Of a stretch of 55,366 bases of DNA, positions 3,017 through 46,687 are shown piece by piece. Positions within the stretch are counted from its first letter, which is position 1. Every line of letters begins with the position of its first letter. The stretch lies in NCBI GenBank assembly GCA_002104905.1, contig MCFE01000589.1, forward strand, positions 1 through 55,366. The letters are read 5' to 3'. Source of the stretch: Basidiobolus meristosporus CBS 931.73 (Eukaryota; Fungi; Basidiobolomycota). The translations under genes were made by a program, and so were the position numbers. Under the pieces are notes generated by a model that was not told where the DNA came from, did no database searches, and saw only the letters and a program-made list of their open reading frames with translations.

Positions 3017-3588
3017 ATTATAACACAAGCAAAGGCAGTCATTGTCTGGTAAGATTGCGTAACAACGGCCGAAATACTTGAGTGTTACCCACGATAAGTA
3101 CATGCCATCCAGTAATTTTTAAAAGTGATATCGAAGGTCGATAGCGAAGATAGTGCTCTGGCTACTCGGCATGTACGTACTGCCAATCAGAAAGGCATAG
3201 TCTCTCTCAGAGTAAGGCTTGATGTGTTGCCCCTGGGGTTCAAGAATCTCACCGACGATATAGTGAGGTCGGCACAGCTAGCTTTGATCAAGAAGCTTTC
3301 AAGAAATATTGGTGTGGATATGTGGCTTGGCCACACTGGGAAGTATCAGCACGCGTTACTAGTGATGTGTGGTACAACGATGATGAGAAGCTTCACCAGA
3401 TGGTAAATTTAGAAATATCGGGATCCAACACCACACTTTGTAATTTAATCAGTTATTATGCATGATTATGGCGGAAGGTTACATGATCGCTTGGATTAAG
3501 AAAGGTGAGTTTGGACGCAGGTTTTCGGGTCTTGGTGGCCGCAGGAAGAAATCCCGATGGACAAAGGTAAGAACGACAAGCATGGATC

Positions 3589-33280: not shown

Positions 33281-34580
33281 ATGACCAAGACTGAGAAAGT
33301 TAGAGATATCCCTTGGGAAAAGCGTTCTTTATGGAGCCGTCTTCACAAGGTCCATTGCATCCTACTGATTTCCACTCCTCTTATCGCACTTTATGGCTTC
33401 GTGAACGTTTCATTGCAAGCCAAAACCCTTCTCTGGACATTGTTCTACTACTACATCTCGGCGTTCGGTATTACTGGAGGTAAGTCTCTTCCATGCTCTT
33501 ATTCAATGGAATGATCCTAATCATCCTTTGCAGGATATCATCGCCTGTGGGCTCACAAGTCCTATTCCGCCATACTTCCAGTTCAAATTATGCTCTCTTG
33601 CGCAGGAGCTGCCGCAGTCCAGGGTTCCATTCAATGGTGGAGTCGTGGTCACCGCGCTCATCACCGCTATGTAGATACTGACAAGGTATATATTCCCTAC
33701 TGTGTGTGTACAAAAGCATATACTAAACTAAATCTAGGATCCTTACAACGCTAATCGAGGACTTTGGTACTCTCATCTTGGCTGGTTGCTGATGAAGCCT
33801 GAACCCGGAAAGATTGGCTACGCTGATACGTCGGATCTAAAGAAAGACCCTGTCGTGGTCTTCCAACACAAGCATTATGTGAAATTCGCACTATTCATGG
33901 GATTCGTCTTCCCCACATTGGTCCCTGGTCTATGCTGGGGAGATTGGCAGGGAGGATTTTTCTATTCTGCCATTGCACGCCTAGTTTTTGTGCATCATGC
34001 CACCTTCTGCGTCAACAGTTTGGCACATTACATTGGAGAATTCACTTACGATGATAAGCACACCCCACGTGACCACATCATCACGGCCTTTGTCACTCTT
34101 GGAGAAGGATATCACAATTTCCATCACGAGTTCCCTGGGGATTATCGCAATGCCATCCGGTACTATCAGTATGATCCCACCAAATGGACCATCCGCTTGC
34201 TTTCCTTCTTTGGGCTCACCTACGATTTGAAACGATTCCCCACCAATGAGATCGTCAAGGGCTATGTCCATATGCAGGAGAAGAAGATCGATGCTATCAA
34301 GCAGACCCTCGACTGGGGTAAAAAGCGTGAAGAACTTCCCGCCTACAGCCCAAAGCAATTCCAGCATCGAGTCAAGGTGGACAACTGCAATTGGGTCATC
34401 ATCGATGGCTTCATTCATGATGTGGCTGATTTTATTCAAGATCATCCTGGAGGGAAGGCATTGATTAAGTCCTATATTGGTAAAGATTGCACAGACGCAT
34501 TCACCGGCGGTGTGTACGATCACAGCAACGGTGCCCGGAACTTGCTCACGTCTATGCGCGTGGGCACCATTAGTAAATAA
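33281..34580 (+). CDS. OLE1: Delta-9 fatty-acyl-CoA desaturase with C-terminal cytochrome b5 domain, 3 exons
   Basis: His boxes [19 protein letters not shown] and GEGYHNFHH; b5 domain FIQDHPGG...VYDHS. Confidence 0.95.
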
Positions 34581-34634: not shown

Positions 34635-36211
34635 TCATTCCCGCACTCCGGGGTAGCTTTTCCACTTCTGCAGCGAATTCGGTCAGCCTCGTGGCATAGG
34701 AAGCTCTAACTCGTGATGTAGACTTACTTTGTGGTTTAGCTTGCGAAAGTCTTTGATCTCGGAGATCAAGATCAGATACTTGGCTAAGGGGTACAGCTCG
34801 CGGTCAGTGGCTCTGGACACCGGTCCGTTCTTGAATGCGGAGATTTTAAGTCCCTGAGCGATGAAGGTGAGCCAGACCTCAAAAGGAGACGACAGTGCAT
34901 GACCTTACACTTGCTGGGTTCATCGCAAAGTTCCTCCCCAGGTCATCGATATGAATGGTGTTCTCAGCTGAGAATTGATCAGGAAACTTCGACCAGATTA
35001 TGTCCAAAGCCTTCACCTGATGTTTGAACGGCGTGCCATCTGGGCGCCTGGTTGTGATGGAGAACATGCAAGAGATATCGATCACTGGGGCAATCGGTAA
35101 GCAGATTGGTAAGCAGACTTGTCTGATGTACACTGACCTGCGGCAATCTTGTACTCCGGGTGTGTTAGGAGACCTAGTTCGGTCACTTTCATTTCCTTCC
35201 AATAAAGTCTGTTACCACAACAGTTTGATCGTCTCCTATCGATCTGCTGCTTACCAGGGTTCTCCAGGATGTTTGACTCCAAATCATAATGTCGTAGCAT
35301 TCATACACAGTAGCCTGAGATGAGTGAGTGGTCGTGCCATGCGAACGGGAGAGATCGTACACTTGTCCTTACCATAAATTCATGAAGCCCAGGCCTCATT
35401 AGCTCACTGATGTGATTTGCTGGTGTTTTGCAGTCAAACAGAGTGTAGTCTGATGCGAATGATTTAGATATGTGGCGTTATGCCTTTTGCTTTCTGCCAG
35501 TATTCCATATGTTACCTAGATCTAGTACAAGGAGCTTTTTATCTACGGGGGTGTTAGCGATGACGGAATTCCGAGGAAAATGAAGCTTATACAACCTTGA
35601 CGCAACGGGTTCAGTAGGGGGATTTTTGCCTAGTGAATCGTTAATACAACTTCGATATCGCAGGTAAACCACAGATACCTTCGAGATGGTTTCCATGAGC
35701 TTGGCCTTGTTTTCCTTGTCGTTCTTGTAAGTATCATCATCCTCTGGTATATAGTCATAATCAAGATCATTGATCACTTCAGGGAGATCAAGTTCGCTAG
35801 GATCTTTGAGAATGTTTTCCTCTGGGGTACCTAATGCACAGTGGGTGAGTTCCAATGCAGCAATATCCCCAAAGGTCGAATAAGCTTACCCATCATTATG
35901 AATGTATGATTGTCTTTCAGTTGCAGTGAGCCAAGTACAATATCATCCAGCTAAAATGAAGCCGTTTTAAAAGCCAATTCAGAGGAAGAGTTGCTTCGAG
36001 ATCTTACAGGAAGCTTTCCTTTGACTAAGCCGATGATCTTCTGTCGTTTTGGCTTCACTTGAGTTAGATGGGCTAGTTTATCCTTTAAACTCCCCACTGT
36101 GTCTGTTGTCAATACCTCTATGGGCAATTTGGTACCTTTCCATGTGGCAGTCATATTAAGACGCCTTTTTTTCGATACCTCCAGATCAGTATCTACTCTA
36201 TTATTACTCAT
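34635..36211 (-). CDS. UBLCP1: Ubiquitin-like domain-containing CTD phosphatase 1, multi-exon
   Basis: N-terminal UBL (TVGSLKDKLAHLTQVKPKRQKIIGLVKGK); HAD motif LLVLDL|DYTLFD; MRPGLHEF; IHIDDLGRNFAMNP; DRELYPLAKYL; ends KWKSYPGVRE*. Confidence 0.92.
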
Positions 36212-36586: not shown

Positions 36587-38230
36587 ATGCCGCCATCAAC
36601 CATGCATCACTGCCTCATTTCGCTATTGCTCCTTTGCAGCCTTGGCCAGATCCTGGCCAAGGTGGTTAAATATAACTTCAATGTAACCCTCGAAGACTAC
36701 GCCTCGGACTGCTTCACTCGCCCTAGTGTCCTGATTAACGGCCTCTCGCCGGGTCCGGAAATCCATGTTGAAAGCGGTGATCAGTTGATTGTGAATGTCA
36801 AGAACTCTATGAAAGAGTCCGATTTCGCTTTACATTTCCACGGAATCATCCAACGGGGGACGCCCTTTTCCGACGGGGTTCCGTACCTCACTCAATTCCC
36901 TATCGCTCCTGGTAGCAGCTATCGCTATGTCATCAACATCGGGAAACAAGCTGGAACGTACTTCTACCACGCACACACCGAAGCCTCTGCCTCGACCGCC
37001 TACGGCGCCCTTATTGTTCATGAGAAGGACGAGTCGGAAATCCCATACGATTATGATGAAGAAAAAGTGCTGATGCTGGGCGATGTATTTCATAGGAGTG
37101 ATGAAGATATTGTCAACGGGTTGCTGGGAATCCCAAGCTTCAAACCCATTGGAGATCCCAACTCCTTGACCATCAATGGAAAAACCTTCGCCAAGTGGAA
37201 CTGCACCGAACCTGGAGCCAGATGCGACGATACGTGCGAACGGGAGGTAGTGACAGTCGATCCAGGGAAATCATACAGGTTTCGCATCATCAACTCCTCG
37301 TTAAACCGCCACCTTTCTTTTGCCATTGAGGGCCATCCACTGACAGTGATTGAGGCAGATGGCTCTTATGTGGTTGCCCATGCAGTAAATCACATCCAAA
37401 TCTCTCCAGGACAAAGATACTCGGCGCTGGTCTATGCAAGCCAGCAATCTGGCAACTTCTACATGCGATCAGAGATCATGGAACGATCGCCAGCCCTGAG
37501 CAACGGCTTAGCAATTCTGCATTACTCAGACGCATCCGAACCAAACACCAGGGCGCTAAACCCAGTGGTGAATGCGCCCATCGTGCGTACACTCACGTTT
37601 TTGGAAGAATTTGAGCTTTACAAGCCTTTGCCGGGATCCCCCACCCATAGCGAAGTGGCATTTCCTAGATACTTCGATCGGGAGATTGTGATTGAGATTC
37701 GCGAGACCGAGGAGAGGTCCTACTTGAATGGTAGGTCTTATCAGCTACCCAAAGGAAATATGCTACAAGCGTTGTATACTGGAAAGAGATCAAACAACCC
37801 TGACTACGAGACTGCTATCGCCAGGGGAGGGTATGATGCAGCAAGAGAATCGTACCCCATTCGACATGGCGAGGTGATCCAAGTAGTGCTTCAGAACACT
37901 TACTTGAAGGAAAGCAGGGCATGCATAACCCATCCATTTCATCTGCATGGCCATTCTGTGTATGACCTTGGTGGAGGCTATGGCAAATACAATCCAGAAA
38001 CCGACCGCCTTGCTGCCTCACAGATTGTAGATCCCTTGTACAGAGATGTGGTCAACGTTTATGGCCAGTCGGATACCGGTGACTACGGGATGCCTTGTGG
38101 CTACCGCATCATCAGATTCGTGGCAGACAACCCAGGAGTCTGGCTATTCCATTGTCATATCTCCTCGCATATGATCCAAGGCATGCAAGCAGTCTTTGAG
38201 ACTGGCGTTGAGGAGCTATCATCATACTAA
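36587..38230 (+). CDS. Secreted multicopper oxidase (laccase/ascorbate-oxidase-like), intronless, 547 aa
   Basis: Signal peptide; the four Cu motifs HFHG, YFYHAH, HPFHLHGH and HCHISSHMIQGM (Met axial ligand). Confidence 0.93.
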   Translation: MPPSTMHHCLISLLLLCSLGQILAKVVKYNFNVTLEDYASDCFTRPSVLINGLSPGPEIHVESGDQLIVNVKNSMKESDFALHFHGIIQRGTPFSDGVPYLTQFPIAPGSSYRYVINIGKQAGTYFYHAHTEASASTAYGALIVHEKDESEIPYDYDEEKVLMLGDVFHRSDEDIVNGLLGIPSFKPIGDPNSLTINGKTFAKWNCTEPGARCDDTCEREVVTVDPGKSYRFRIINSSLNRHLSFAIEGHPLTVIEADGSYVVAHAVNHIQISPGQRYSALVYASQQSGNFYMRSEIMERSPALSNGLAILHYSDASEPNTRALNPVVNAPIVRTLTFLEEFELYKPLPGSPTHSEVAFPRYFDREIVIEIRETEERSYLNGRSYQLPKGNMLQALYTGKRSNNPDYETAIARGGYDAARESYPIRHGEVIQVVLQNTYLKESRACITHPFHLHGHSVYDLGGGYGKYNPETDRLAASQIVDPLYRDVVNVYGQSDTGDYGMPCGYRIIRFVADNPGVWLFHCHISSHMIQGMQAVFETGVEELSSY

Positions 38231-39171: not shown

Positions 39172-39837
39172 ATGTTTTGTTCTTTCCCGCCGTGCAACAG
39201 GAACGTCACTGCCTTTGGCAAACGTCTGATGAGCACCACGTCCAATGCCACTCACTACCAAATCTTGGGGGTTCACGAAAAAGCCACTAGGAAAGAAATT
39301 CGCAGGAAATATATCAGTCTTTGTAAGCTGCTTCACCCCGATATTGTTGGGAAAAACAAGGACAGCAACGAGCGTTTTCTGCAGATCAAAAATGCCTACT
39401 CTGTCCTGTCGGACCCACAGCAACGAAAAATCTATGATGACGGAAAGGTGTACTACAACAACTTCGTGAATAATACTCACCATTGGGCACGACACGCTAG
39501 AGCTCAGAATCCGCGGTGGGGGTATGATGCCCGTGTATACGGTCAGCAGACTGCTGGCTACGGAGGTGGTAAACCACTCTACGGCAGCAACAATAAAATA
39601 GCAGCCATCATCCTGGTATTAGTTGGCTTTGCGGGAATCGGGCAGTTTCTTCGCTTTGAAAGGGTCAGCAACCGAGTCAAGAATACCAACATGTTACAGC
39701 ATCAAGCCGCGGCTGATGCATACCACAAAGTACGCACCATGGCAGCAGAGTTAGGGCCAGCTCGCAGGATCGAAATGTTGGTTGAAAGTCATCATAAGAC
39801 CAAGGCCAAGTTGGACGAGTTAAGAAAGAATAAATGA
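39172..39837 (+). CDS. J-domain protein (DnaJ type III, likely mitochondrial membrane, DNAJC4-like)
   Basis: HYQILGV...IRRKYISLCKLLHPD...FLQIKNAYSVLSDPQQRKIYD; presequence-like N-terminus; one transmembrane segment IAAIILVLVGFAGI. Confidence 0.85.
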   Translation: MFCSFPPCNRNVTAFGKRLMSTTSNATHYQILGVHEKATRKEIRRKYISLCKLLHPDIVGKNKDSNERFLQIKNAYSVLSDPQQRKIYDDGKVYYNNFVNNTHHWARHARAQNPRWGYDARVYGQQTAGYGGGKPLYGSNNKIAAIILVLVGFAGIGQFLRFERVSNRVKNTNMLQHQAAADAYHKVRTMAAELGPARRIEMLVESHHKTKAKLDELRKNK

Positions 39838-40550
39838 ATATGTAACACCAAGGTAAAGCCCAGATCGTGTACTAGAATCGCTCAACAATCCATTGTTTTC
39901 TTAGGCTAGACCATCAGAAATAAACAAATTGGTGGTAACATAATCAAGAAGAAAAATTGCAAATGGGCCTACACGCAAGATGCGCCGCAGCAGCGCAAGT
40001 TGATTTGTTAGCTTCAGATAGCGGGATAACTTGATATTCTGTTACGTATGGCAGACGTAGGTGTGCCAGATTGTTGGTTCTGTGATGTGCGAGAGTACTC
40101 GGCAAGTCACAAATTAACAACCTTCGGGTAATTGCGAGTATGGTGGGAGAGTGCAGTAATGATATAATAGATTCATAGATATATTCACATTCCATGATGT
40201 CGCAAATCTGCTCTCCTCGACGTTCCCAATCCGGCAATATAGTGTATTCCTCAATATATCAGCATTTACTTCGGTTTCCCATGATTGTATGCCAATTCCA
40301 TTCTAATTTGGTCATTCATCCACCGCCGCTCTATCTAGATACCTTATTAATATTCCAATGAAATTCTTATTTAAGCAAGAAATGGTTTTGCTGGACGAAA
40401 CTCTAAATTCTTCCCGACCAGAGCCTTTGTCTCACGCTTTATACCTTTGCTCAAGCTCCAAATATTAATATTTTACTTACAGTATATTCTACCTTTTCAC
40501 TATCTGCTTACCACTTAAAATCAGTGCATAGACCTGACTTGACTTGGTAT

Positions 40551-43500
40551 ATGACAATATCTTCACCCACTTATATACAGCTTGATACAGAACTGTTCAA
40601 CAGATCCAGTTCACGCTCGACGTCACTCTCACCCTCCCCGGTTGATACACCTACTGTCCATGCCGGCAGACCGCGGAATGAATTGTGGGAGCATTTTTTG
40701 AAGGGAGAAAGACGGTCTACCACAAACAAATATGATGCACGCTGTCGCTACTGTGTTGAGAGATTAGGCTTTGATATTGTCCGGCCGGTACGCGGCGAAA
40801 AGAAATTCATGGTTGCCCATCTTAAAAAATGCGAGAATGCTCCAGAAACCCTAAGAACAAGGTACCGTGTTGGAGCAGCACAAAGTCCAGATATTTTCAA
40901 CAGGACCGAAGAGAAGGCAACAGAGCTGAAGCAGGAGTTGAATAAACCGTCCACGAAGAAGCGGAAAATCAACAGTCTTTTGGATTCCGAATGGATACCC
41001 ACTACTATTACTTCTCACGTCCTCAACGAGTTTTTTAACTCATATACAACTCAGCTGGAACAGAAGCCCCAGGCATGCAAGTTCCAACTAGCAGAAGGCT
41101 TCCTTTCATACTACAAAGATCGGATTCCCCCATTTGGCTTCAATGGACTTGGTGAAATCATTTACCGCAGAACCTATAGTCGACTCCGAAAAGACGGGGC
41201 CCGAGAACAATGGTAATCATGATTATGCCCCAGCAATCAGCCACGATTTCGCTAATTTCTGGTGTTAATTTAGGTGGCAAACCGTCAAACGAGTCGTTGA
41301 TGGGACGTTCAATATGCAAAGGAAATGGTGCGAGCGCATGAACTCTGGCTGGGATGAGGAGAAGGTATTTGCAAACACTGTTGACTGGCTTCTAGTTCGC
41401 CCCAGGTTTTAAGTCCAATTTCAACAAAGGCGCAGCGCTCTGCTCAAAAGATGTATGAGCGTATTTTCCACATGAAATTCCTTCCTCCAGGAAGAGGTAA
41501 TAATGTTATACTATGATTGGTTTCCAGTTATTTTGAGTTTAACAATGAATTCCAGGTCTCTGGGCTATGGGGTCACCGCTAACCGAAGAGCGAGGGATAT
41601 ATGCGTCGTTAAATAATTGTGGATTTGTTAGCACAGATTGTATGTGGACCAAGGGATCAACACCTAGCAAACCGTTTTCCTTTTTGATGGATGCCTCCAT
41701 GCTGGGGTATGTGTTACACTTGAATCCCAAGACTCGATTCGTTACTTATATTCGTATTAGGGTTGGCGTTGGATTCGACACAAAAGGCGCCGCCATTGCC
41801 AAAGACCAACAGATACTCGTAACTGGCCCTAATCTCGCTCTTTCCCCTTCCACCTTCGTTATCCCTGACTGCCGAGAAGGATGGGTCAAGTCCGTAGAGT
41901 TGCTCATCGACAGTTACTTTGATCCTAACATGAGCGTACAAGTATGACGAGTCTACAGTGCACACTGAATCCACTTTAACATAGTCTAACGCAAGCTTTG
42001 ATGCATTAGGAATTCAAATATCATTGCATACGCCCGGAAGGCACCCCTATCAAAGGATTCGGAGGACAGTCCTCCGGGCCACAGTCCCTGATGGAGCTGC
42101 ATCAGCGCATACGCGAAGCTCTTGACAGGAATATTGGCGCCCCGATCTCTGTAACCACGATTGTAGACATAATGAATTTGATTGGAAAATGCGTCGTCAG
42201 TGGAAACGTAAGTGCGACCCTGATACTCTGTGCTTCGGCAGAGTATCTAACCGTTTCCTGGTCAATATTATTTATATTATATTTACAGGTTAGGCGTAGC
42301 GCAGAAATTGCATTTGGTGACCCATTCGATGAGGAGTACATTGATTTGAAAAATTATGAGGTGAATCCGCATCGTTGTGAATATGGATGGACCAGCAATA
42401 ACTCGGTAGGGTACAGCATCTCATGTATCGTTGTTTCGGTATATTAATCCCGATCCTCGTAGGTGTTTGCCAAGATCGGTATGGACTACCACAACATTTG
42501 CAAGCGCGTGGTCTCCAATGGAGAGCCCGGTTTTTCTTGGCTAGAAAACGCAAAGGACTACGGAAGAATGGGCGACCCCATGGTAATGAGAGATATACCA
42601 TCTACATTATCCTGCATATCACTTACCATTCCCATTACCAGACAAAGCGAGACTATCGTGCTCAAGGCGGCAACCCATGCCTTGAACAGACTTTGGAATC
42701 CTTTGAGCTTTGCTGCCTTGTAGAGGTTTTCCCCAATAATCATTCTTCAATGGAGGATTTTCTGGGAACGTTGGAATCGGCATTTCTTTATGCAAAGACA
42801 GTCACTCTTGGAACAACACATTGGCCAGAGAGCAACAGAGTGATGATGAGAAATCGGCGAATCGGGACTGGGTTAAGTGGCATTGCACAATTTATTAGCA
42901 AAAAAGGCACGCCCCAACGTTCTGTACATATTGCGCGCTACAAAGCTGTTAACCATATGACATGACTTGCAGGGATTGAAGAGCTCCGGATATGGTGTGA
43001 GAGTGGATATAAGCATCTTTCAGAAGTGGATAAGCAGTAAGTATCCATACATCGGTGGTGCATTCTATTAACAACCATACTAAATTGCTATCTTGTTTTA
43101 GGCTGTGTGAATGGTTGTGCATCCCCCAATCAATCAAGATTAGCACAGTTAAACCGAGTGGAACTGTATCTCTTCTAGCCGGAGGTACGTTATTAACTTT
43201 CTTTACATATCTCAATTCCATGAACCTCATCCTCATTCATGGTTGTAGCGACCCCTGGATTACATTATCCAGAAAGTAGATTTTGTATTCGTCGTGTGCG
43301 CCTGTCTAAACTGTCTGAAATGGTAGACCCTTTCAGAGAGGCGGGATACAGAATAGAACCTGACGTTGGTAAGTATATATAATCGACACGCTCCAACTTT
43401 CTAATATACAAGTCTAATCCTTACTCAAATTGCGATCTTGAAGTCGATCCCAATACACTGGTAATAGAAATTCCTATTGATCATGGTGAAGGAGTGAGAT

Positions 43501-43988
43501 CTCTAGCCGAAGTAACAATGTGGGAGCAACTCTCCTTGGCAGCCTTTATGCAGAAATATTGGTCCGATAACCAGGTCTCATGCACCATCACATTCGATCC
43601 TGAGTCTGAGGGGCCTCAACTGAAGCATGCGCTTAATTTCTTTCAGTATCAATTGAAAGGAGTTTCATTCTTGCCCAGGATCGCGATGGGCGCTTATTCC
43701 CAGATGCCGTACGAAGCCATATCTGAAATGAAGTATTATCAACTAACTTCAAGTATAACCAGACCAGGTCCAAAAAGTCCCAGTTTGACACGCCTGTTAC
43801 TAAATCCACAGTGCTTGACTGCACCTGATCTTCGGAATGTCGAAGGAGATACCACTGTCGACCCAGAAATCGAGAGGTTTTGTGATTGGAGTCCATACAT
43901 GCTCGAAACTACCTGTCCTGGCACAGGGTTGGTAATGAATGTCAACGGGCTTGAAGAACATAGATTACCCACAAATACTAGATTTTAG
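40551..43988 (+). CDS. Class II (adenosylcobalamin-dependent, monomeric RTPR-type) ribonucleotide reductase with N-terminal BED zinc finger, about 13 exons
   Basis: PPFGFNGLGEIIYRRTYSR; MKFLPPGR|GLWAMG; LNNCGF; GVGVGFDTKG; IPDCREGWV; VVSGN|VRRSAEI; WTSNNS; NGEPGF; catalytic GGNPCLEQ and ELCCLVE; RIGTGLSG; TVKPSGTVSLLAG|ATPG; KYWSDNQVSCT; ERFCD. Exon 1 also encodes W-x2-F...CRYC...HLKKC. Confidence 0.93.
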
Positions 43989-44457
43989 AATGTACTCTAC
44001 CCTACTCGATACTGAATTACTAGAAAACGACCGATTTTGGAGCAGTAATATCTTTCAAAGGATACCAAAAACCTCGATACCTCTAAATGAGGGATTGTAT
44101 GAGGAATTGTGATATTTTACCGCAATTCGTACGCATTCCACTGTACATTTCGTCAATATTCTGTCATTAAATATTTGGATTTACCCTGATTTGTAATAGT
44201 AGCACTTGAAAGTACCCAATTGCCCGTTCATAGCATGTATAATTCCCACCTATTATCTTGCATTGATTCTTTTTTTTAGAAAGGGGACCAGGTTTTTTTG
44301 TAGAATAGCTGCGTTCAATGAGGGGAAGGTGATCAAATTTTACGCGCTTCACCCACTTCCGGTTCAGCGGAGTAAAGTGAAATACTATTTATACACATAT
44401 TACTCACACCCACGCCCGCACCCGCACTTACCTCATCAAATAATAGACCCAACTAAT

Positions 44458-45516: not shown

Positions 45517-46278
45517 ATGGAGCTCCCACATATTGGCAAGAACTGCGCACTAAACGACTGTCATCAATTAGGTAAGTCTTTGAGTACTATGCGCGTCTTC
45601 GAACATCCCATTCACGGTCAAATTCGTTGGAGCCAGACTTTTTACCGTACAAGTGTCATTTGTGTAAACGCGACTTCTGGTAACTTCATTAGAGAAAGCT
45701 CGTCTCTTTCAATTGGTTGCTTATTACTGTTTGCGACTACCGATGGAAGTCAGGATCATTGGAGACCTGAAAACCATCAGTGTCAGTACGAATCGGAGGT
45801 TAGCGATGTGAGGGTTCCGGTTTGCCCACTGTGTGCCAAGCCCGTGCCGGTGAACAAGGGAGAGAATCCCAATCGACGGGTAGCTTGAACGCTTCTATGG
45901 ATTCACTAGCCCCTATACTAACCACTTCCCAAGATTGACGAGCATATTAGAAAGGGATGCATAGAGCCAGCTACCACTACAGACAGGTCACCAGCCTACA
46001 AGAATGTATGCTCTTACCGTACATGTAAAACCAAGGTGCTAGTTTCGGCAAAGTGTCCCTCCTGCCATAAGCAGTACTGTTTGAAGCATCGCTTTGAAAC
46101 CGATCACGATTGCACCAAAGACGCCAAAACCGGAGGTACAGTATCCAGCATCCAAGTGCAATCATACTGAAGTGGATATCTTATCTTACATCTCATAGGC
46201 ACTAGTAAGGCACCCAAGCGGGCACTATTTCACGGGTACTTGAGTCTTGCAAAAGCCCATTTTTCTGAGCTGCGTTAA
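45517..46278 (+). CDS. AN1-type zinc-finger protein (ZFAND2/AIRAP-like), multi-exon
   Basis: MELPHIGKNCALNDCHQL|DFLPYKCHLCKRDFC|QDHWRPENHQC; VPVCPLCAKPVP; |IDEHIRKGC; second AN1 CSYRTC...CPSCHKQYCLKHRFETDHDC. Confidence 0.88.
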
Positions 46279-46687
46279 CCACCAAACCTCCACTCAATAT
46301 TAGGACAAAATCTGGCCAGCCATCTAGCCAGCCCAATCCACGTCAAGAGGTAGGGGATTTGGCACTTGCGTATTTAGGCATTCACTCACTCTTCATATTT
46401 AGCACCAAAAACCCGGGAAAGCCAAGAACAAAGGGTGTATCATCAGCTAATATTCTCATTCCATTATATTACAATCACGCATACATTAATCAATTTTGTC
46501 AACGTTAATAAACCCATTTCAACTCGCAACTCGCAACTCGCATCACTGATCGCAGAATATTCGAGGTAGAAGGAAACGTTGATTTTAGGCAACGCGCTAA
46601 TCCAAGGATTGGCCATCCATATCTCGGATTGTCTTTATCTCGGTGCCTGGAATAAACTTTTTCGATGAAAGAAAACATTGGAAAACC

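What the first reader, a model, noticed from the sequence alone, without database searches (positions are those of the whole stretch)
40551..41212. BED zinc finger + NLS fused in-frame to a B12-dependent class II ribonucleotide reductase
Seen: one uninterrupted exon (ATG 40551 to the intron donor at ~41213) encodes a Ser/Thr-rich leader, then NELWEHF...ARCRYC...MVAHLKKC (40686-40832). It continues with an SV40-like NLS PSTKKRKI (40947-40970) and then the conserved class II RNR N-terminus (FQLAEGF...PPFGFNGLGEIIYRRTYSR, from ~41082). No Met lies between the end of the finger and the RNR core. Established: W-x2-F...CxxC...H-x3-(C/H) is the BED finger, a DNA-binding module typical of hAT transposases. 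Class II RNRs need adenosylcobalamin; some carry N-terminal ATP-cones, but I know of none with a BED finger. Inference: a transposon-derived DNA-binding and nuclear-import module was domesticated onto a dNTP-synthesising enzyme. That could tether dNTP production to chromatin or specific loci, or provide transcriptional autoregulation. This is the best candidate for an undescribed system in the window.
Basis: partly seen in the sequence, partly recalled or inferred. Interest (0 to 1): 0.85.

Follow-up and report, generated by a model that had tools for sequence, protein, structure and literature searches.

The report
Zinc-finger-tagged B12 ribonucleotide reductase in Basidiobolus
A Basidiobolus fungus makes, from one messenger RNA, a vitamin-B12-dependent DNA-precursor enzyme carrying a conserved DNA-binding-type (BED-like) zinc finger and a nuclear-import-like motif at its front end, a domain combination not described for this enzyme family.

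Summary
The window is contig MCFE01000589.1 of Basidiobolus meristosporus CBS 931.73. A 13-exon gene (40551-43988, +) encodes 887 aa. Its parts, in order, are a disordered leader, a basic C2HC finger (W46, F49, C65, C68, H90, C94), a disordered linker with KKRK, and an intact-looking monomeric class II (AdoCbl) ribonucleoside-triphosphate reductase.

A spliced transcript contig covers 40533-44033 with all 12 introns removed and exon 1 unspliced. Finger and enzyme are therefore on one mRNA. The deposited model (801 aa) starts at Met87, inside the finger, and is probably too short.

A syntenic paralogue in the same genome (P0404, 879 aa) has the same architecture. Synonymous sites between the two copies are saturated. 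The finger is 79% identical, like the enzyme's N-terminus (80%); leader and linker are 34%.

The finger is BED-like but below Pfam's cut-off. Its relatives are BED-type proteins of oomycetes and fungi without transposase domains, so a transposon origin is not supported. Eight NrdJ proteins from other fungal genera lack the finger.

Nuclear or chromatin tethering of dNTP synthesis is the best-supported function, but it is inference. Verdict: a real, conserved new variant of a known enzyme, apparently undescribed in the papers searched.

The parts
40533..44033 (+). Extent of the spliced transcript contig (mRNA) of the gene
   Evidence: a 2732-nt Logan contig of run X1, identical to the window, with 12 joints at intron borders. 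The genomic runs X2 and X3 show none of these joints.
40551..43988 (+). Coding region: 13 exons, 887 aa. Exons: 40551-41212, 41274-41364, 41430-41496, 41556-41706, 41761-41941, 42010-42207, 42289-42405, 42463-42582, 42642-42906, 42973-43036, 43102-43184, 43249-43368, 43444-43988.
   Evidence: The spliced CDS is 2664 nt, in frame, with one terminal stop. 887 minus 86 equals the deposited 801-aa product.
40551..40661 (+). Ser/Thr-rich leader (residues 1-37), poorly conserved and predicted disordered in the paralogue
   Evidence: 34% identity to the paralogue; pLDDT about 30 in the paralogue model.
40662..40865 (+). BED-like C2HC zinc finger (residues 38-105). W46 = 40686-40688, F49 = 40695-40697, C65 = 40743-40745, C68 = 40752-40754, H90 = 40818-40820, C94 = 40830-40832.
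   Evidence: Net charge +9 and pI 10.1. 79% identical to the paralogue.
40809..40811 (+). Met87: start codon of the deposited 801-aa model. It lies between the CxxC and HxxxC halves of the finger.
   Evidence: One search gives locus 14208, which is window 40809. One search shows four out-of-frame ATGs between ATG 40551 and this codon.
40866..41081 (+). Linker (residues 106-177), diverged and predicted disordered in the paralogue
   Evidence: 34% identity, pN 0.44; pLDDT below 30 for residues 107-169 of the paralogue.
40947..40970 (+). PSTKKRKI, a monopartite NLS-like motif (KKRK = 40956-40967)
   Evidence: TKKRK is conserved in the paralogue inside the diverged linker.
41082..41212 (+). Start of the class II RNR core (RNR_Alpha domain) within exon 1
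   Evidence: PF17975, E 6.4e-9, 36.7 bits against a cut-off of 26.4; homologues' N-termini align from here.
41609..41635 (+). LNNCGFVST, the site equivalent to Cys119 of L. leichmannii RTPR
42672..42728 (+). NPCLEQTLESFELCCLVEV: catalytic Asn, thiyl-radical Cys, Glu and second active-site Cys (Asn406, Cys408, Glu410, Cys419 of 1L1L)
   Evidence: One search aligns the paralogue to 1l1l_A. Searches show the identical motif in the window.
42907..42972 (+). GC-AG intron (intron 9)
   Evidence: the joint skips 66 bases. GCACGC...TTGCAG.
43878..43916 (+). C-terminal Cys pair with altered spacing (FC-x10-C instead of the family's C-x4-C)
   Evidence: C-terminal alignment of fungal and bacterial NrdJ. 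One search gives the coordinates.

Best explanation
Shown or strongly supported (about 0.9):
- This is a real Basidiobolus gene. Its single mRNA encodes a disordered leader, a compact and strongly basic BED-type C2HC zinc finger, and then a disordered linker of about 70 residues carrying a KKRK nuclear-import-like motif.
- After the linker comes a complete monomeric adenosylcobalamin-dependent ribonucleoside-triphosphate reductase (NrdJ/RTPR) with the catalytic residues checked here in place.
- The fusion predates an old duplication within Basidiobolus.
- The finger has been kept as tightly as the enzyme's N-terminus.

Inferred (about 0.4-0.45):
- The KKRK motif brings the enzyme into the nucleus.
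- The basic finger, held on a flexible tether, binds DNA or chromatin.
- This one-polypeptide enzyme converts NTPs straight to dNTPs, so it would make DNA precursors next to replication or repair.
- The finger-less paralogues (P0407, P0418) and the class I RNR, reported in all fungi analysed in PMC8085122, would serve other compartments or bulk supply.
For: One mRNA:
- A spliced contig spans 40533-44033 with exon 1 unspliced. The 12 joints are absent from the genomic runs.
- ATG 40551 is the first ATG after the in-frame stop at 40404. Four out-of-frame ATGs precede Met87.

Finger homology:
- phmmer gave E 1.7e-9 to 1e-6 against BED-type proteins.
- W, F, C, C, H, C are invariant in the alignment.
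- zf-BED is the only recurrent Pfam family, hit by 7 of 19 members.
- P0034 passes the Pfam cut-off.
- The best PDB sequence and fold matches are ZBED2, ZBED1 and ZBED3.
- By my count about 12 of the top 30 Swiss-Prot fold matches are BED-domain proteins, aligned at their BED domain.

Selection:
- Paralogue P0404 carries the same architecture in its deposited model.
- The paralogue locus is collinear exon by exon.
- pS is 0.73-0.95, which is saturated. Finger pN is 0.13 (79% identity) and RNR N-terminus pN is 0.12 (80%). Leader and linker pN is 0.37-0.44 (34%). TKKRK is conserved.

Independent domain:
- In the AF2 model of the paralogue the finger has pLDDT 87-96, flanked by residues 1-40 and 107-169 at pLDDT about 30.
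- The finger has net charge +9 to +10 and pI 10.1. The core has pI about 6.

Enzyme intact:
- PF17975 and PF21995 are hit.
- The paralogue matches 1l1l_A at E 2.3e-97, with the Cys119, Asn406, Cys408, Glu410 and Cys419 equivalents present.

Paralogue set:
- Four NrdJ paralogues were seen here, with different N-termini. PMC8085122 counts five.
Against: - There is no localisation, DNA-binding or activity data.
- The finger is below Pfam's gathering score, and no fold match is significant (E at least 0.24, Z at most 3.3).
- BED fingers can also mediate protein contacts.
- The contig does not exclude additional shorter transcripts that start downstream of 40551.
- The run holding the contig is labelled 'DNA?'. 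I call it cDNA because it lacks all 12 introns and the genomic runs lack the joined form.
- Forcing class I RNR into the fission-yeast nucleus slowed S phase and raised mutagenesis (bioRxiv 10.1101/2024.10.29.620917). Nuclear RNR is therefore not obviously beneficial.
- The C-terminal redox Cys pair has unusual spacing in this clade, so normal turnover is not assured.
Confidence: 0.45

Rival explanations
1. The finger is a regulatory or protein-interaction module rather than a chromatin tether. Monomeric NrdJ lacks an ATP-cone. The appended finger could gate activity, oligomerisation or partner binding (for example the thioredoxin system), perhaps in response to nucleic acid. KKRK could be part of a basic binding surface.
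For: - The clade that carries the finger also has a remodelled C-terminal redox tail, C-x10-C instead of C-x4-C. It sits on a long stem branch of 0.34. Both suggest co-evolution of enzyme and appendage.
- N-terminal extensions of RNRs are usually regulatory (PMC9669993).
- BED-type fingers also occur in non-DNA contexts, such as the ZBED3 complex 9l4j.
Against: - The finger is joined by a predicted-disordered linker of about 65 residues. The tool returned no inter-domain confidence, so packing against the core was not assessed.
- Its strong positive charge and BED-type motif fit nucleic-acid binding better.
- A related finger stands in front of unrelated enzymes: cytidine deaminase P0017 and an alpha/beta hydrolase P0066. 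That argues for a general address function, not an RNR-specific regulator.
Confidence: 0.2
2. The protein moonlights as a DNA-binding regulator. The finger-bearing reductase would bind specific promoters, or its own mRNA, to couple dNTP-enzyme abundance to gene expression. This is the logic of bacterial NrdR, which combines a zinc ribbon with a nucleotide sensor.
For: - It has a basic BED-type finger plus an NLS-like motif.
- Many cellular BED proteins are transcription regulators, for example ZBED proteins, dpy-20 and RICESLEEPER among the fold matches.
Against: - There is no evidence of sequence-specific binding.
- The catalytic residues checked are retained in both paralogues, so catalysis is clearly under selection.
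- A single finger usually gives low specificity.
Confidence: 0.12
3. The finger is not part of the working protein. Translation would start at Met87, as in the deposited 801-aa model, or from a downstream transcription start. The upstream frame would be a decaying relic of a neighbouring finger gene.
For: - The public annotation starts at Met87.
- ATG 40551 has a weak context, with T at -3.
- The contig data cannot exclude minor shorter transcripts.
Against: - The transcript includes 40533-40808.
- Four out-of-frame ATGs lie between the first ATG and Met87.
- Met87 would leave half a finger.
- The residues upstream of Met87 within the finger are strongly conserved in a paralogue whose synonymous sites are saturated, and that paralogue's deposited model starts upstream of the finger.
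Confidence: 0.05

Closest known systems
Monomeric class II adenosylcobalamin-dependent ribonucleoside-triphosphate reductase (NrdJ/RTPR; Lactobacillus leichmannii, PDB 1L1L) and its fungal members
   Same: - It has the RNR_Alpha and RNR-II insertion domains.
- The paralogue matches 1l1l_A at E 2.3e-97, with the active-site Cys, Asn and Glu conserved.
- It falls inside a well-supported fungal NrdJ clade (99/98).
- Fungal class II RNRs, including five in B. meristosporus, are already catalogued (PMC8085122).
   Different: - It has a 177-residue N-terminal extension with a BED-like finger and KKRK. The extension was found only in the Basidiobolus sub-clade and was absent from eight NrdJ proteins of other fungal genera and from bacterial NrdJ.
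- The C-terminal Cys pair is spaced C-x10-C instead of C-x4-C.
BED zinc finger (Pfam PF02892 / PROSITE BED-type; ZBED1-6, Ac/hAT transposases, dpy-20, RICESLEEPER)
   Same: - It has the N-terminal W..F signature followed by CxxC and HxxxC.
- zf-BED is the only recurrent Pfam family.
- The predicted fold is a beta-hairpin plus helix, and the best matches are BED domains.
- It is strongly basic.
   Different: - It is below Pfam's gathering score.
- It belongs to a divergent subfamily (motif GRP..LW.HF..GE...C.YC...RG....HL..C) found in oomycete proteins of about 800-1000 aa without recognisable domains and in some early-diverging fungi.
- No hAT transposase domains were found in it or in its nearest relatives.
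- Here it is attached to a metabolic enzyme.
Known RNR appendages: N-terminal ATP-cones, C-terminal zinc fingers of dimeric class II and class III RNRs
   Same: It is an extra domain appended to the catalytic barrel through a flexible segment. Zinc-binding modules are known in class II and class III RNRs (PMC9669993).
   Different: - The known zinc fingers are C-terminal four-Cys modules tied to the redox tail or glycyl-radical domain.
- The known N-terminal modules are nucleotide-sensing ATP-cones.
- This one is N-terminal, is a DNA-binding-type C2HC finger, and is followed by an NLS-like motif. That survey mentions no such domain.
Other finger-enzyme proteins with a related finger: B. meristosporus ORX93143.1 (P0017, finger + cytidine deaminase) and P0066 (finger + alpha/beta hydrolase)
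   Same: A homologous finger stands at the very N-terminus, followed by a low-complexity linker and an enzyme.
   Different: - The enzymes differ.
- In P0017 the finger is a separate exon. The deposited model is partly mis-spliced, with the CAE motif in another frame, so that fusion rests on a gene model.
- In the window the finger and the enzyme's start share one exon.

Membership tests
Class II monomeric AdoCbl ribonucleoside-triphosphate reductase (NrdJ/RTPR) | RNR_Alpha (PF17975) N-terminal domain and RNR-II insertion domain (PF21995) | tested here: met
   PF17975 at 36.7 bits against a cut-off of 26.4 on exon 1; the deposited product of this gene hits PF17975 and PF21995.
Class II monomeric AdoCbl ribonucleoside-triphosphate reductase (NrdJ/RTPR) | Active-site residues equivalent to Cys119, Asn406, Cys408, Glu410 and Cys419 of L. 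leichmannii RTPR | tested here: met
   One search aligns paralogue P0404 to 1l1l_A. The window has the same LNNC and NPCLE...ELCCLVEV motifs.
Class II monomeric AdoCbl ribonucleoside-triphosphate reductase (NrdJ/RTPR) | C-terminal cysteine pair for re-reduction (C-x4-C in relatives) | tested here: inconclusive
   two Cys are present but spaced C-x10-C in the finger-bearing clade.
Class II monomeric AdoCbl ribonucleoside-triphosphate reductase (NrdJ/RTPR) | Adenosylcobalamin-dependent reduction of NTPs | not testable with these tools
   Needs an enzyme assay.
BED zinc finger (PF02892 / PROSITE BED-type) | Sequence signature: aromatic W and F, then CxxC, then H-x3-5-(H/C) | tested here: met
   W46, F49, C65, C68, H90, C94. 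All are invariant in 19 relatives.
BED zinc finger (PF02892 / PROSITE BED-type) | Score above Pfam's gathering threshold | tested here: not met
   15.2 and 16.8 bits against 20.6, and only profile positions 2-26 of 44 are matched.
BED zinc finger (PF02892 / PROSITE BED-type) | Significant homology to accepted members | tested here: met
   E 1.7e-9 to 1e-6 against proteins that UniProt names BED-type. P0034 (E 5.2e-8 to the query) passes Pfam zf-BED at 32.5 bits.
BED zinc finger (PF02892 / PROSITE BED-type) | BED fold (beta-hairpin plus helix around one zinc) | tested here: inconclusive
   The AF2 core has pLDDT above 90. The top PDB matches are 2ct5, 9l4j_E and 2djr, but with E at least 1.2 and Z at most 3.3. 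BED proteins are enriched among Swiss-Prot fold matches with E at least 0.24.
BED zinc finger (PF02892 / PROSITE BED-type) | Zinc and DNA binding | not testable with these tools
   Only the charge (+9, pI 10.1) speaks for it.
hAT-transposase-derived (domesticated) module | hAT dimerisation or RNase-H-like transposase domains in the protein or in the finger's nearest relatives | tested here: not met
   no such Pfam domain in 20 finger-bearing relatives. The window holds a single copy of the finger.
Classical monopartite NLS | K-(K/R)-x-(K/R) core in an accessible segment | tested here: met
   KKRK lies at 40956-40967. TKKRK is conserved in the paralogue within a linker that is 34% identical and predicted disordered. 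Import itself was not tested.

The most novel reading that the evidence does not exclude
Basidiobolus uses one family of BED-type fingers as a shared chromatin or nuclear address tag for nucleotide-metabolism enzymes. The tagged set would be two RTPR paralogues, cytidine deaminase and possibly NIF3. Together they would form a DNA-tethered dNTP supply and salvage system in its unusually large nuclei. It would be a natural counter-example to the rule that active RNR is cytoplasmic.
Probability: 0.18. Interest if true: 0.8.

Novelty: new variant of a known kind. Interest (0 to 1): 0.62.

Why it matters
Where dNTPs are made relative to DNA synthesis is an old open question. Active eukaryotic class I RNR is cytoplasmic. 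Forcing it into the fission-yeast nucleus slowed S phase and raised mutagenesis (bioRxiv 10.1101/2024.10.29.620917).

Here evolution has put a DNA-binding-type finger and an import-like signal on a self-contained, single-chain enzyme that converts NTPs to dNTPs. That arrangement has been kept under selection through an old gene duplication. It is a ready-made natural construct for testing whether local, chromatin-tethered dNTP synthesis works and what it is good for.

It also adds a domain type to the catalogue of RNR appendages. It shows that the public model of this gene is truncated. It hints that related fingers are reused in front of several enzymes in this fungus.

Tried and rejected
- The look-up of sequencing runs with kind 'rna' on 40400-43000 listed nothing. 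Kind 'any' on exon 1 gave run X1, labelled 'DNA?', which turned out to hold the spliced transcript.
- The look-up of encoding contigs with the exon-1 ORF product found nothing.
- The metagenome scan with exon 1 found no relative.
- No protein in the 50%-identity representative library matched both halves of exon 1. This is not evidence of absence, because fungal NrdJ proteins are probably hidden under bacterial cluster representatives; the paralogue only appeared in the later window-weighted search.
- A homologue search with P0140 was swamped by more than 8000 prokaryotic NrdJ.
- Alignments A2 and A3 of exon pieces on a bacterial scaffold were misaligned.
  - After local simulation I used a deliberately window-weighted profile (A4). 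This brought up the Basidiobolus and other fungal NrdJ proteins.
  - The window's own 801-aa product did not appear in that list, for reasons I cannot tell.
- DNA for the two B. ranarum proteins could not be fetched. Their N-termini are therefore unknown.
- dN/dS could not be computed because synonymous sites are saturated. I report pN and identity contrasts instead.
- A hAT-transposon origin was rejected for lack of any transposase domain in relatives.
- A mitochondrial presequence was rejected for this copy from my reading of the sequence: the leader is Ser/Thr-rich and contains acidic residues.
- The full-length AF2 model is poor in the enzyme core (mean pLDDT 57.5). I used it only for the N-terminal domain boundaries.
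Full report
**What is there.** The window is the whole contig MCFE01000589.1 of assembly GCA_002104905.1. A neighbouring laccase has its best named matches in Basidiobolus meristosporus CBS 931.73 and B. ranarum. Other proteins of the same assembly are named B. meristosporus.

The frame is closed upstream by a stop at 40404. No ATG occurs in any frame between 40400 and 40551. The only later in-frame Met before the enzyme is Met87 (40809), and four out-of-frame ATGs lie before it.

**Gene model and transcript.** I built the exon structure by hand and checked it against homologues by tblastn. Laying public runs on 39900-44300 then gave the key result.
- Run X1 holds one 2732-nt contig, identical to the window, that covers 40533-44033.
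- The contig has 12 joints exactly at the intron borders I had inferred. Eleven are GT-AG and one is GC-AG (42907-42972).
- Exon 1 is continuous from 40533 to the donor at 41213.
- The two genomic runs X2 and X3 hold only the unspliced form.

X1 is labelled 'DNA?'. I treat its contig as cDNA rather than a processed DNA copy, because it lacks all 12 introns and the genomic runs lack the joined form.

The spliced CDS is 2664 nt and encodes 887 aa. The deposited gene call spans 40809-43988 and gives 801 aa. That is the same model started at Met87, which cuts the finger between CxxC and HxxxC. I judge the deposited start to be too far downstream. The contig cannot exclude additional shorter transcripts.

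**The enzyme part.**
- Exon 1 from 41082 hits RNR_Alpha above Pfam's cut-off.
- The deposited product also hits the RNR-II insertion domain.
- Full-length bacterial NrdJ proteins begin to align at 41082.
- The paralogue aligns to L. leichmannii RTPR (1l1l_A) at E 2.3e-97. The equivalents of Cys119, Asn406, Cys408, Glu410 and Cys419 are present, and the window has identical motifs.
- One oddity is the C-terminal redox pair. It is C-x4-C in bacterial and other fungal NrdJ, but C-x10-C in the finger-bearing Basidiobolus copies.

**The finger.** Pfam gives zf-BED only below threshold: 15.2 bits on exon 1 and 16.8 bits on the finger alone, against a cut-off of 20.6.

An exhaustive phmmer search of 1.84 billion representatives found two separate sets of hits. 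RNR N-termini matched residues about 165-220. About 17 proteins matched residues 21-113 at E 1.7e-9 to 1e-6.
- Aligned, the second set shares invariant W, F, G, A, C, C, G, H, C.
- Many are oomycete proteins of about 800-1000 aa (Pythium, Phytophthora, Bremia, Lagenidium) that UniProt names 'BED-type domain-containing protein'. A shorter partial Thraustotheca protein also matched but carries no such name.
- One is a Diversispora protein that passes Pfam zf-BED at 32.5 bits.
- zf-BED is the only Pfam family hit repeatedly, by 7 of 19 members.

A profile of the family has ZBED2 (2djr) as its best PDB sequence match, at E 0.39. An AF2 model of the finger has a confident core (pLDDT above 90) with a helix, a beta-hairpin and helices.
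- Its best PDB fold matches are ZBED1, ZBED3 and ZBED2, at E 1.2 or more and Z 3.3 or less.
- By my count about 12 of the top 30 Swiss-Prot matches are BED-domain proteins aligned at their BED domain, all at E 0.24 or more.

I therefore call it a divergent BED-type C2HC finger. None of 20 relatives scanned shows a hAT or other transposase domain. A transposon origin is not supported.

**Conservation.** A window-weighted profile search recovered the fungal NrdJ family. B. meristosporus has further paralogues:
- P0404 (879 aa);
- P0407 (741 aa);
- P0418 (699 aa).

A published survey counts five class II RNRs in this fungus, the highest fungal count I saw in its table (PMC8085122).

P0404's deposited model contains the same leader, finger, TKKRK linker and enzyme. 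Its locus (L003, contig MCFE01000154.1) is collinear with the window exon by exon and shares the downstream zf-AN1 gene. Introns and intergenic DNA have diverged.

Comparison of exon 1 between the two copies:

| Segment | aa identity | pN | pS |
|---|---|---|---|
| Leader (1-37) | 34% | 0.37 | 0.86 |
| Finger (38-105) | 79% | 0.13 | 0.90 |
| Linker (106-176) | 34% | 0.44 | 0.73 |
| RNR N-terminus (177-220) | 80% | 0.12 | 0.95 |

Synonymous sites are saturated, so dN/dS could not be computed. TKKRK survives inside the diverged linker.

In a maximum-likelihood tree the window's gene, P0404 and two N-terminally truncated B. ranarum models form a 100/100 clade on a long stem. P0404 is sister to a B. 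ranarum protein at 92/93. By parsimony the fusion predates both the duplication and the species split. I could not fetch the B. ranarum DNA to check this.

Eight NrdJ proteins from Calcarisporiella, Umbelopsis, Ambispora, Rhizophagus, Funneliformis, Coemansia and Martensiomyces have short or presequence-like N-termini and no finger. So do the other two B. meristosporus paralogues.

**Architecture.** In an AF2 model of the paralogue, residues 1-40 and 107-169 are at pLDDT about 30, the finger is at 87-96, and the enzyme begins at about residue 170. The core of that model is poor, so I use it only for these boundaries. The finger has net charge +9 to +10 and pI 10.1, while the enzyme core is acidic. 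This is the picture of an independent, basic domain on a flexible tether that carries a KKRK motif.

**How it most likely works.** Shown: one mRNA, one frame, a conserved finger, and an enzyme with its checked catalytic residues in place. Inferred: KKRK drives nuclear import and the finger binds DNA or chromatin. A single-chain enzyme that turns NTPs directly into dNTPs would then work next to replication or repair, while finger-less paralogues and class I RNR serve elsewhere. I put this at about 0.45.

Rivals:
- A regulatory or interaction module co-evolving with the altered redox tail (0.2).
- A moonlighting DNA-binding regulator (0.12).
- A finger that is not translated (0.05). The transcript, the intervening ATGs and the selection pattern argue against this one.

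**Wider pattern.** A homologous finger stands at the N-terminus of a B. meristosporus cytidine deaminase model (P0017 = ORX93143.1). In that gene the finger is a separate exon and the deposited model is partly mis-spliced. It also stands in front of an alpha/beta hydrolase in an unidentified organism (P0066).

First-stage notes on other pieces of this genome report a second BED-RNR locus, BED-deaminase and BED-NIF3 fusions, and an RNR with a mitochondrial-type presequence.
- I confirmed the second BED-RNR locus, assuming that note refers to the P0404 locus.
- I partly confirmed the deaminase case.
- I did not test the rest.

**Known or new.** Class II RNRs of early-diverging fungi are known (PMC8085122). 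A survey of RNR insertions and extensions lists N-terminal ATP-cones and C-terminal zinc fingers but no N-terminal DNA-binding-type finger (PMC9669993). No paper in the library holds both 'BED zinc finger' and 'ribonucleotide reductase'. The fused protein sequence itself is already public as P0404. I class the finding as a new variant of a known kind.

Noticed in passing
window 40809-43988: The deposited gene model (801 aa) starts at Met87, inside the zinc finger. The transcript and the paralogue indicate a start at 40551 (887 aa).
   Followed up: yes
window 42907-42972: Intron 9 of the RNR gene is a GC-AG intron, confirmed by the transcript joint. The other 11 introns are GT-AG and 54-81 nt long.
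   Followed up: yes
window 43878-43916: The C-terminal redox cysteine pair is spaced C-x10-C in the finger-bearing Basidiobolus copies. All other fungal and bacterial NrdJ compared have C-x4-C.
   Followed up: partly
L003 3001-6380 and 7344-7965 (contig MCFE01000154.1): The paralogous BED-RNR locus is collinear exon by exon with the window and has the same downstream zf-AN1 gene. It is an old segmental or whole-genome duplicate with saturated synonymous sites.
   Followed up: yes
L002 2501-3698 (contig MCFE01000245.1): The deposited model ORX93143.1 joins a homologous finger exon (2501-2830) to a cytidine deaminase. The model skips the CAE zinc motif, which lies in another frame at 3158-3298, so it is partly mis-spliced. 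The fusion needs RNA evidence.
   Followed up: partly
proteins P0008, P0012, P0073, P0078, P0093 and others (oomycetes): A conserved oomycete family of proteins of about 800-1000 aa starts with this finger type and has no other recognisable Pfam domain. Its function is unknown.
   Followed up: no
proteins P0140, P0105 and hits: Many metagenomic prokaryotic NrdJ proteins that are 54-64% identical to the fungal enzyme carry large insertions. Several of the hits have additional Pfam hits PF14528 and PF14890, which I take from memory to be intein or homing-endonuclease domains. P0140's insertion sits just after the LNNC active-site motif.
   Followed up: no
window 33281-34580, 34635-36154, 36587-38230, 39172-39837, 45517-46450: Neighbouring genes by deposited calls: a fatty-acid desaturase with a cytochrome b5 domain, a NIF-type phosphatase, a laccase-like multicopper oxidase, a DnaJ protein just upstream of the RNR gene, and a zf-AN1 protein downstream.
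   Followed up: no
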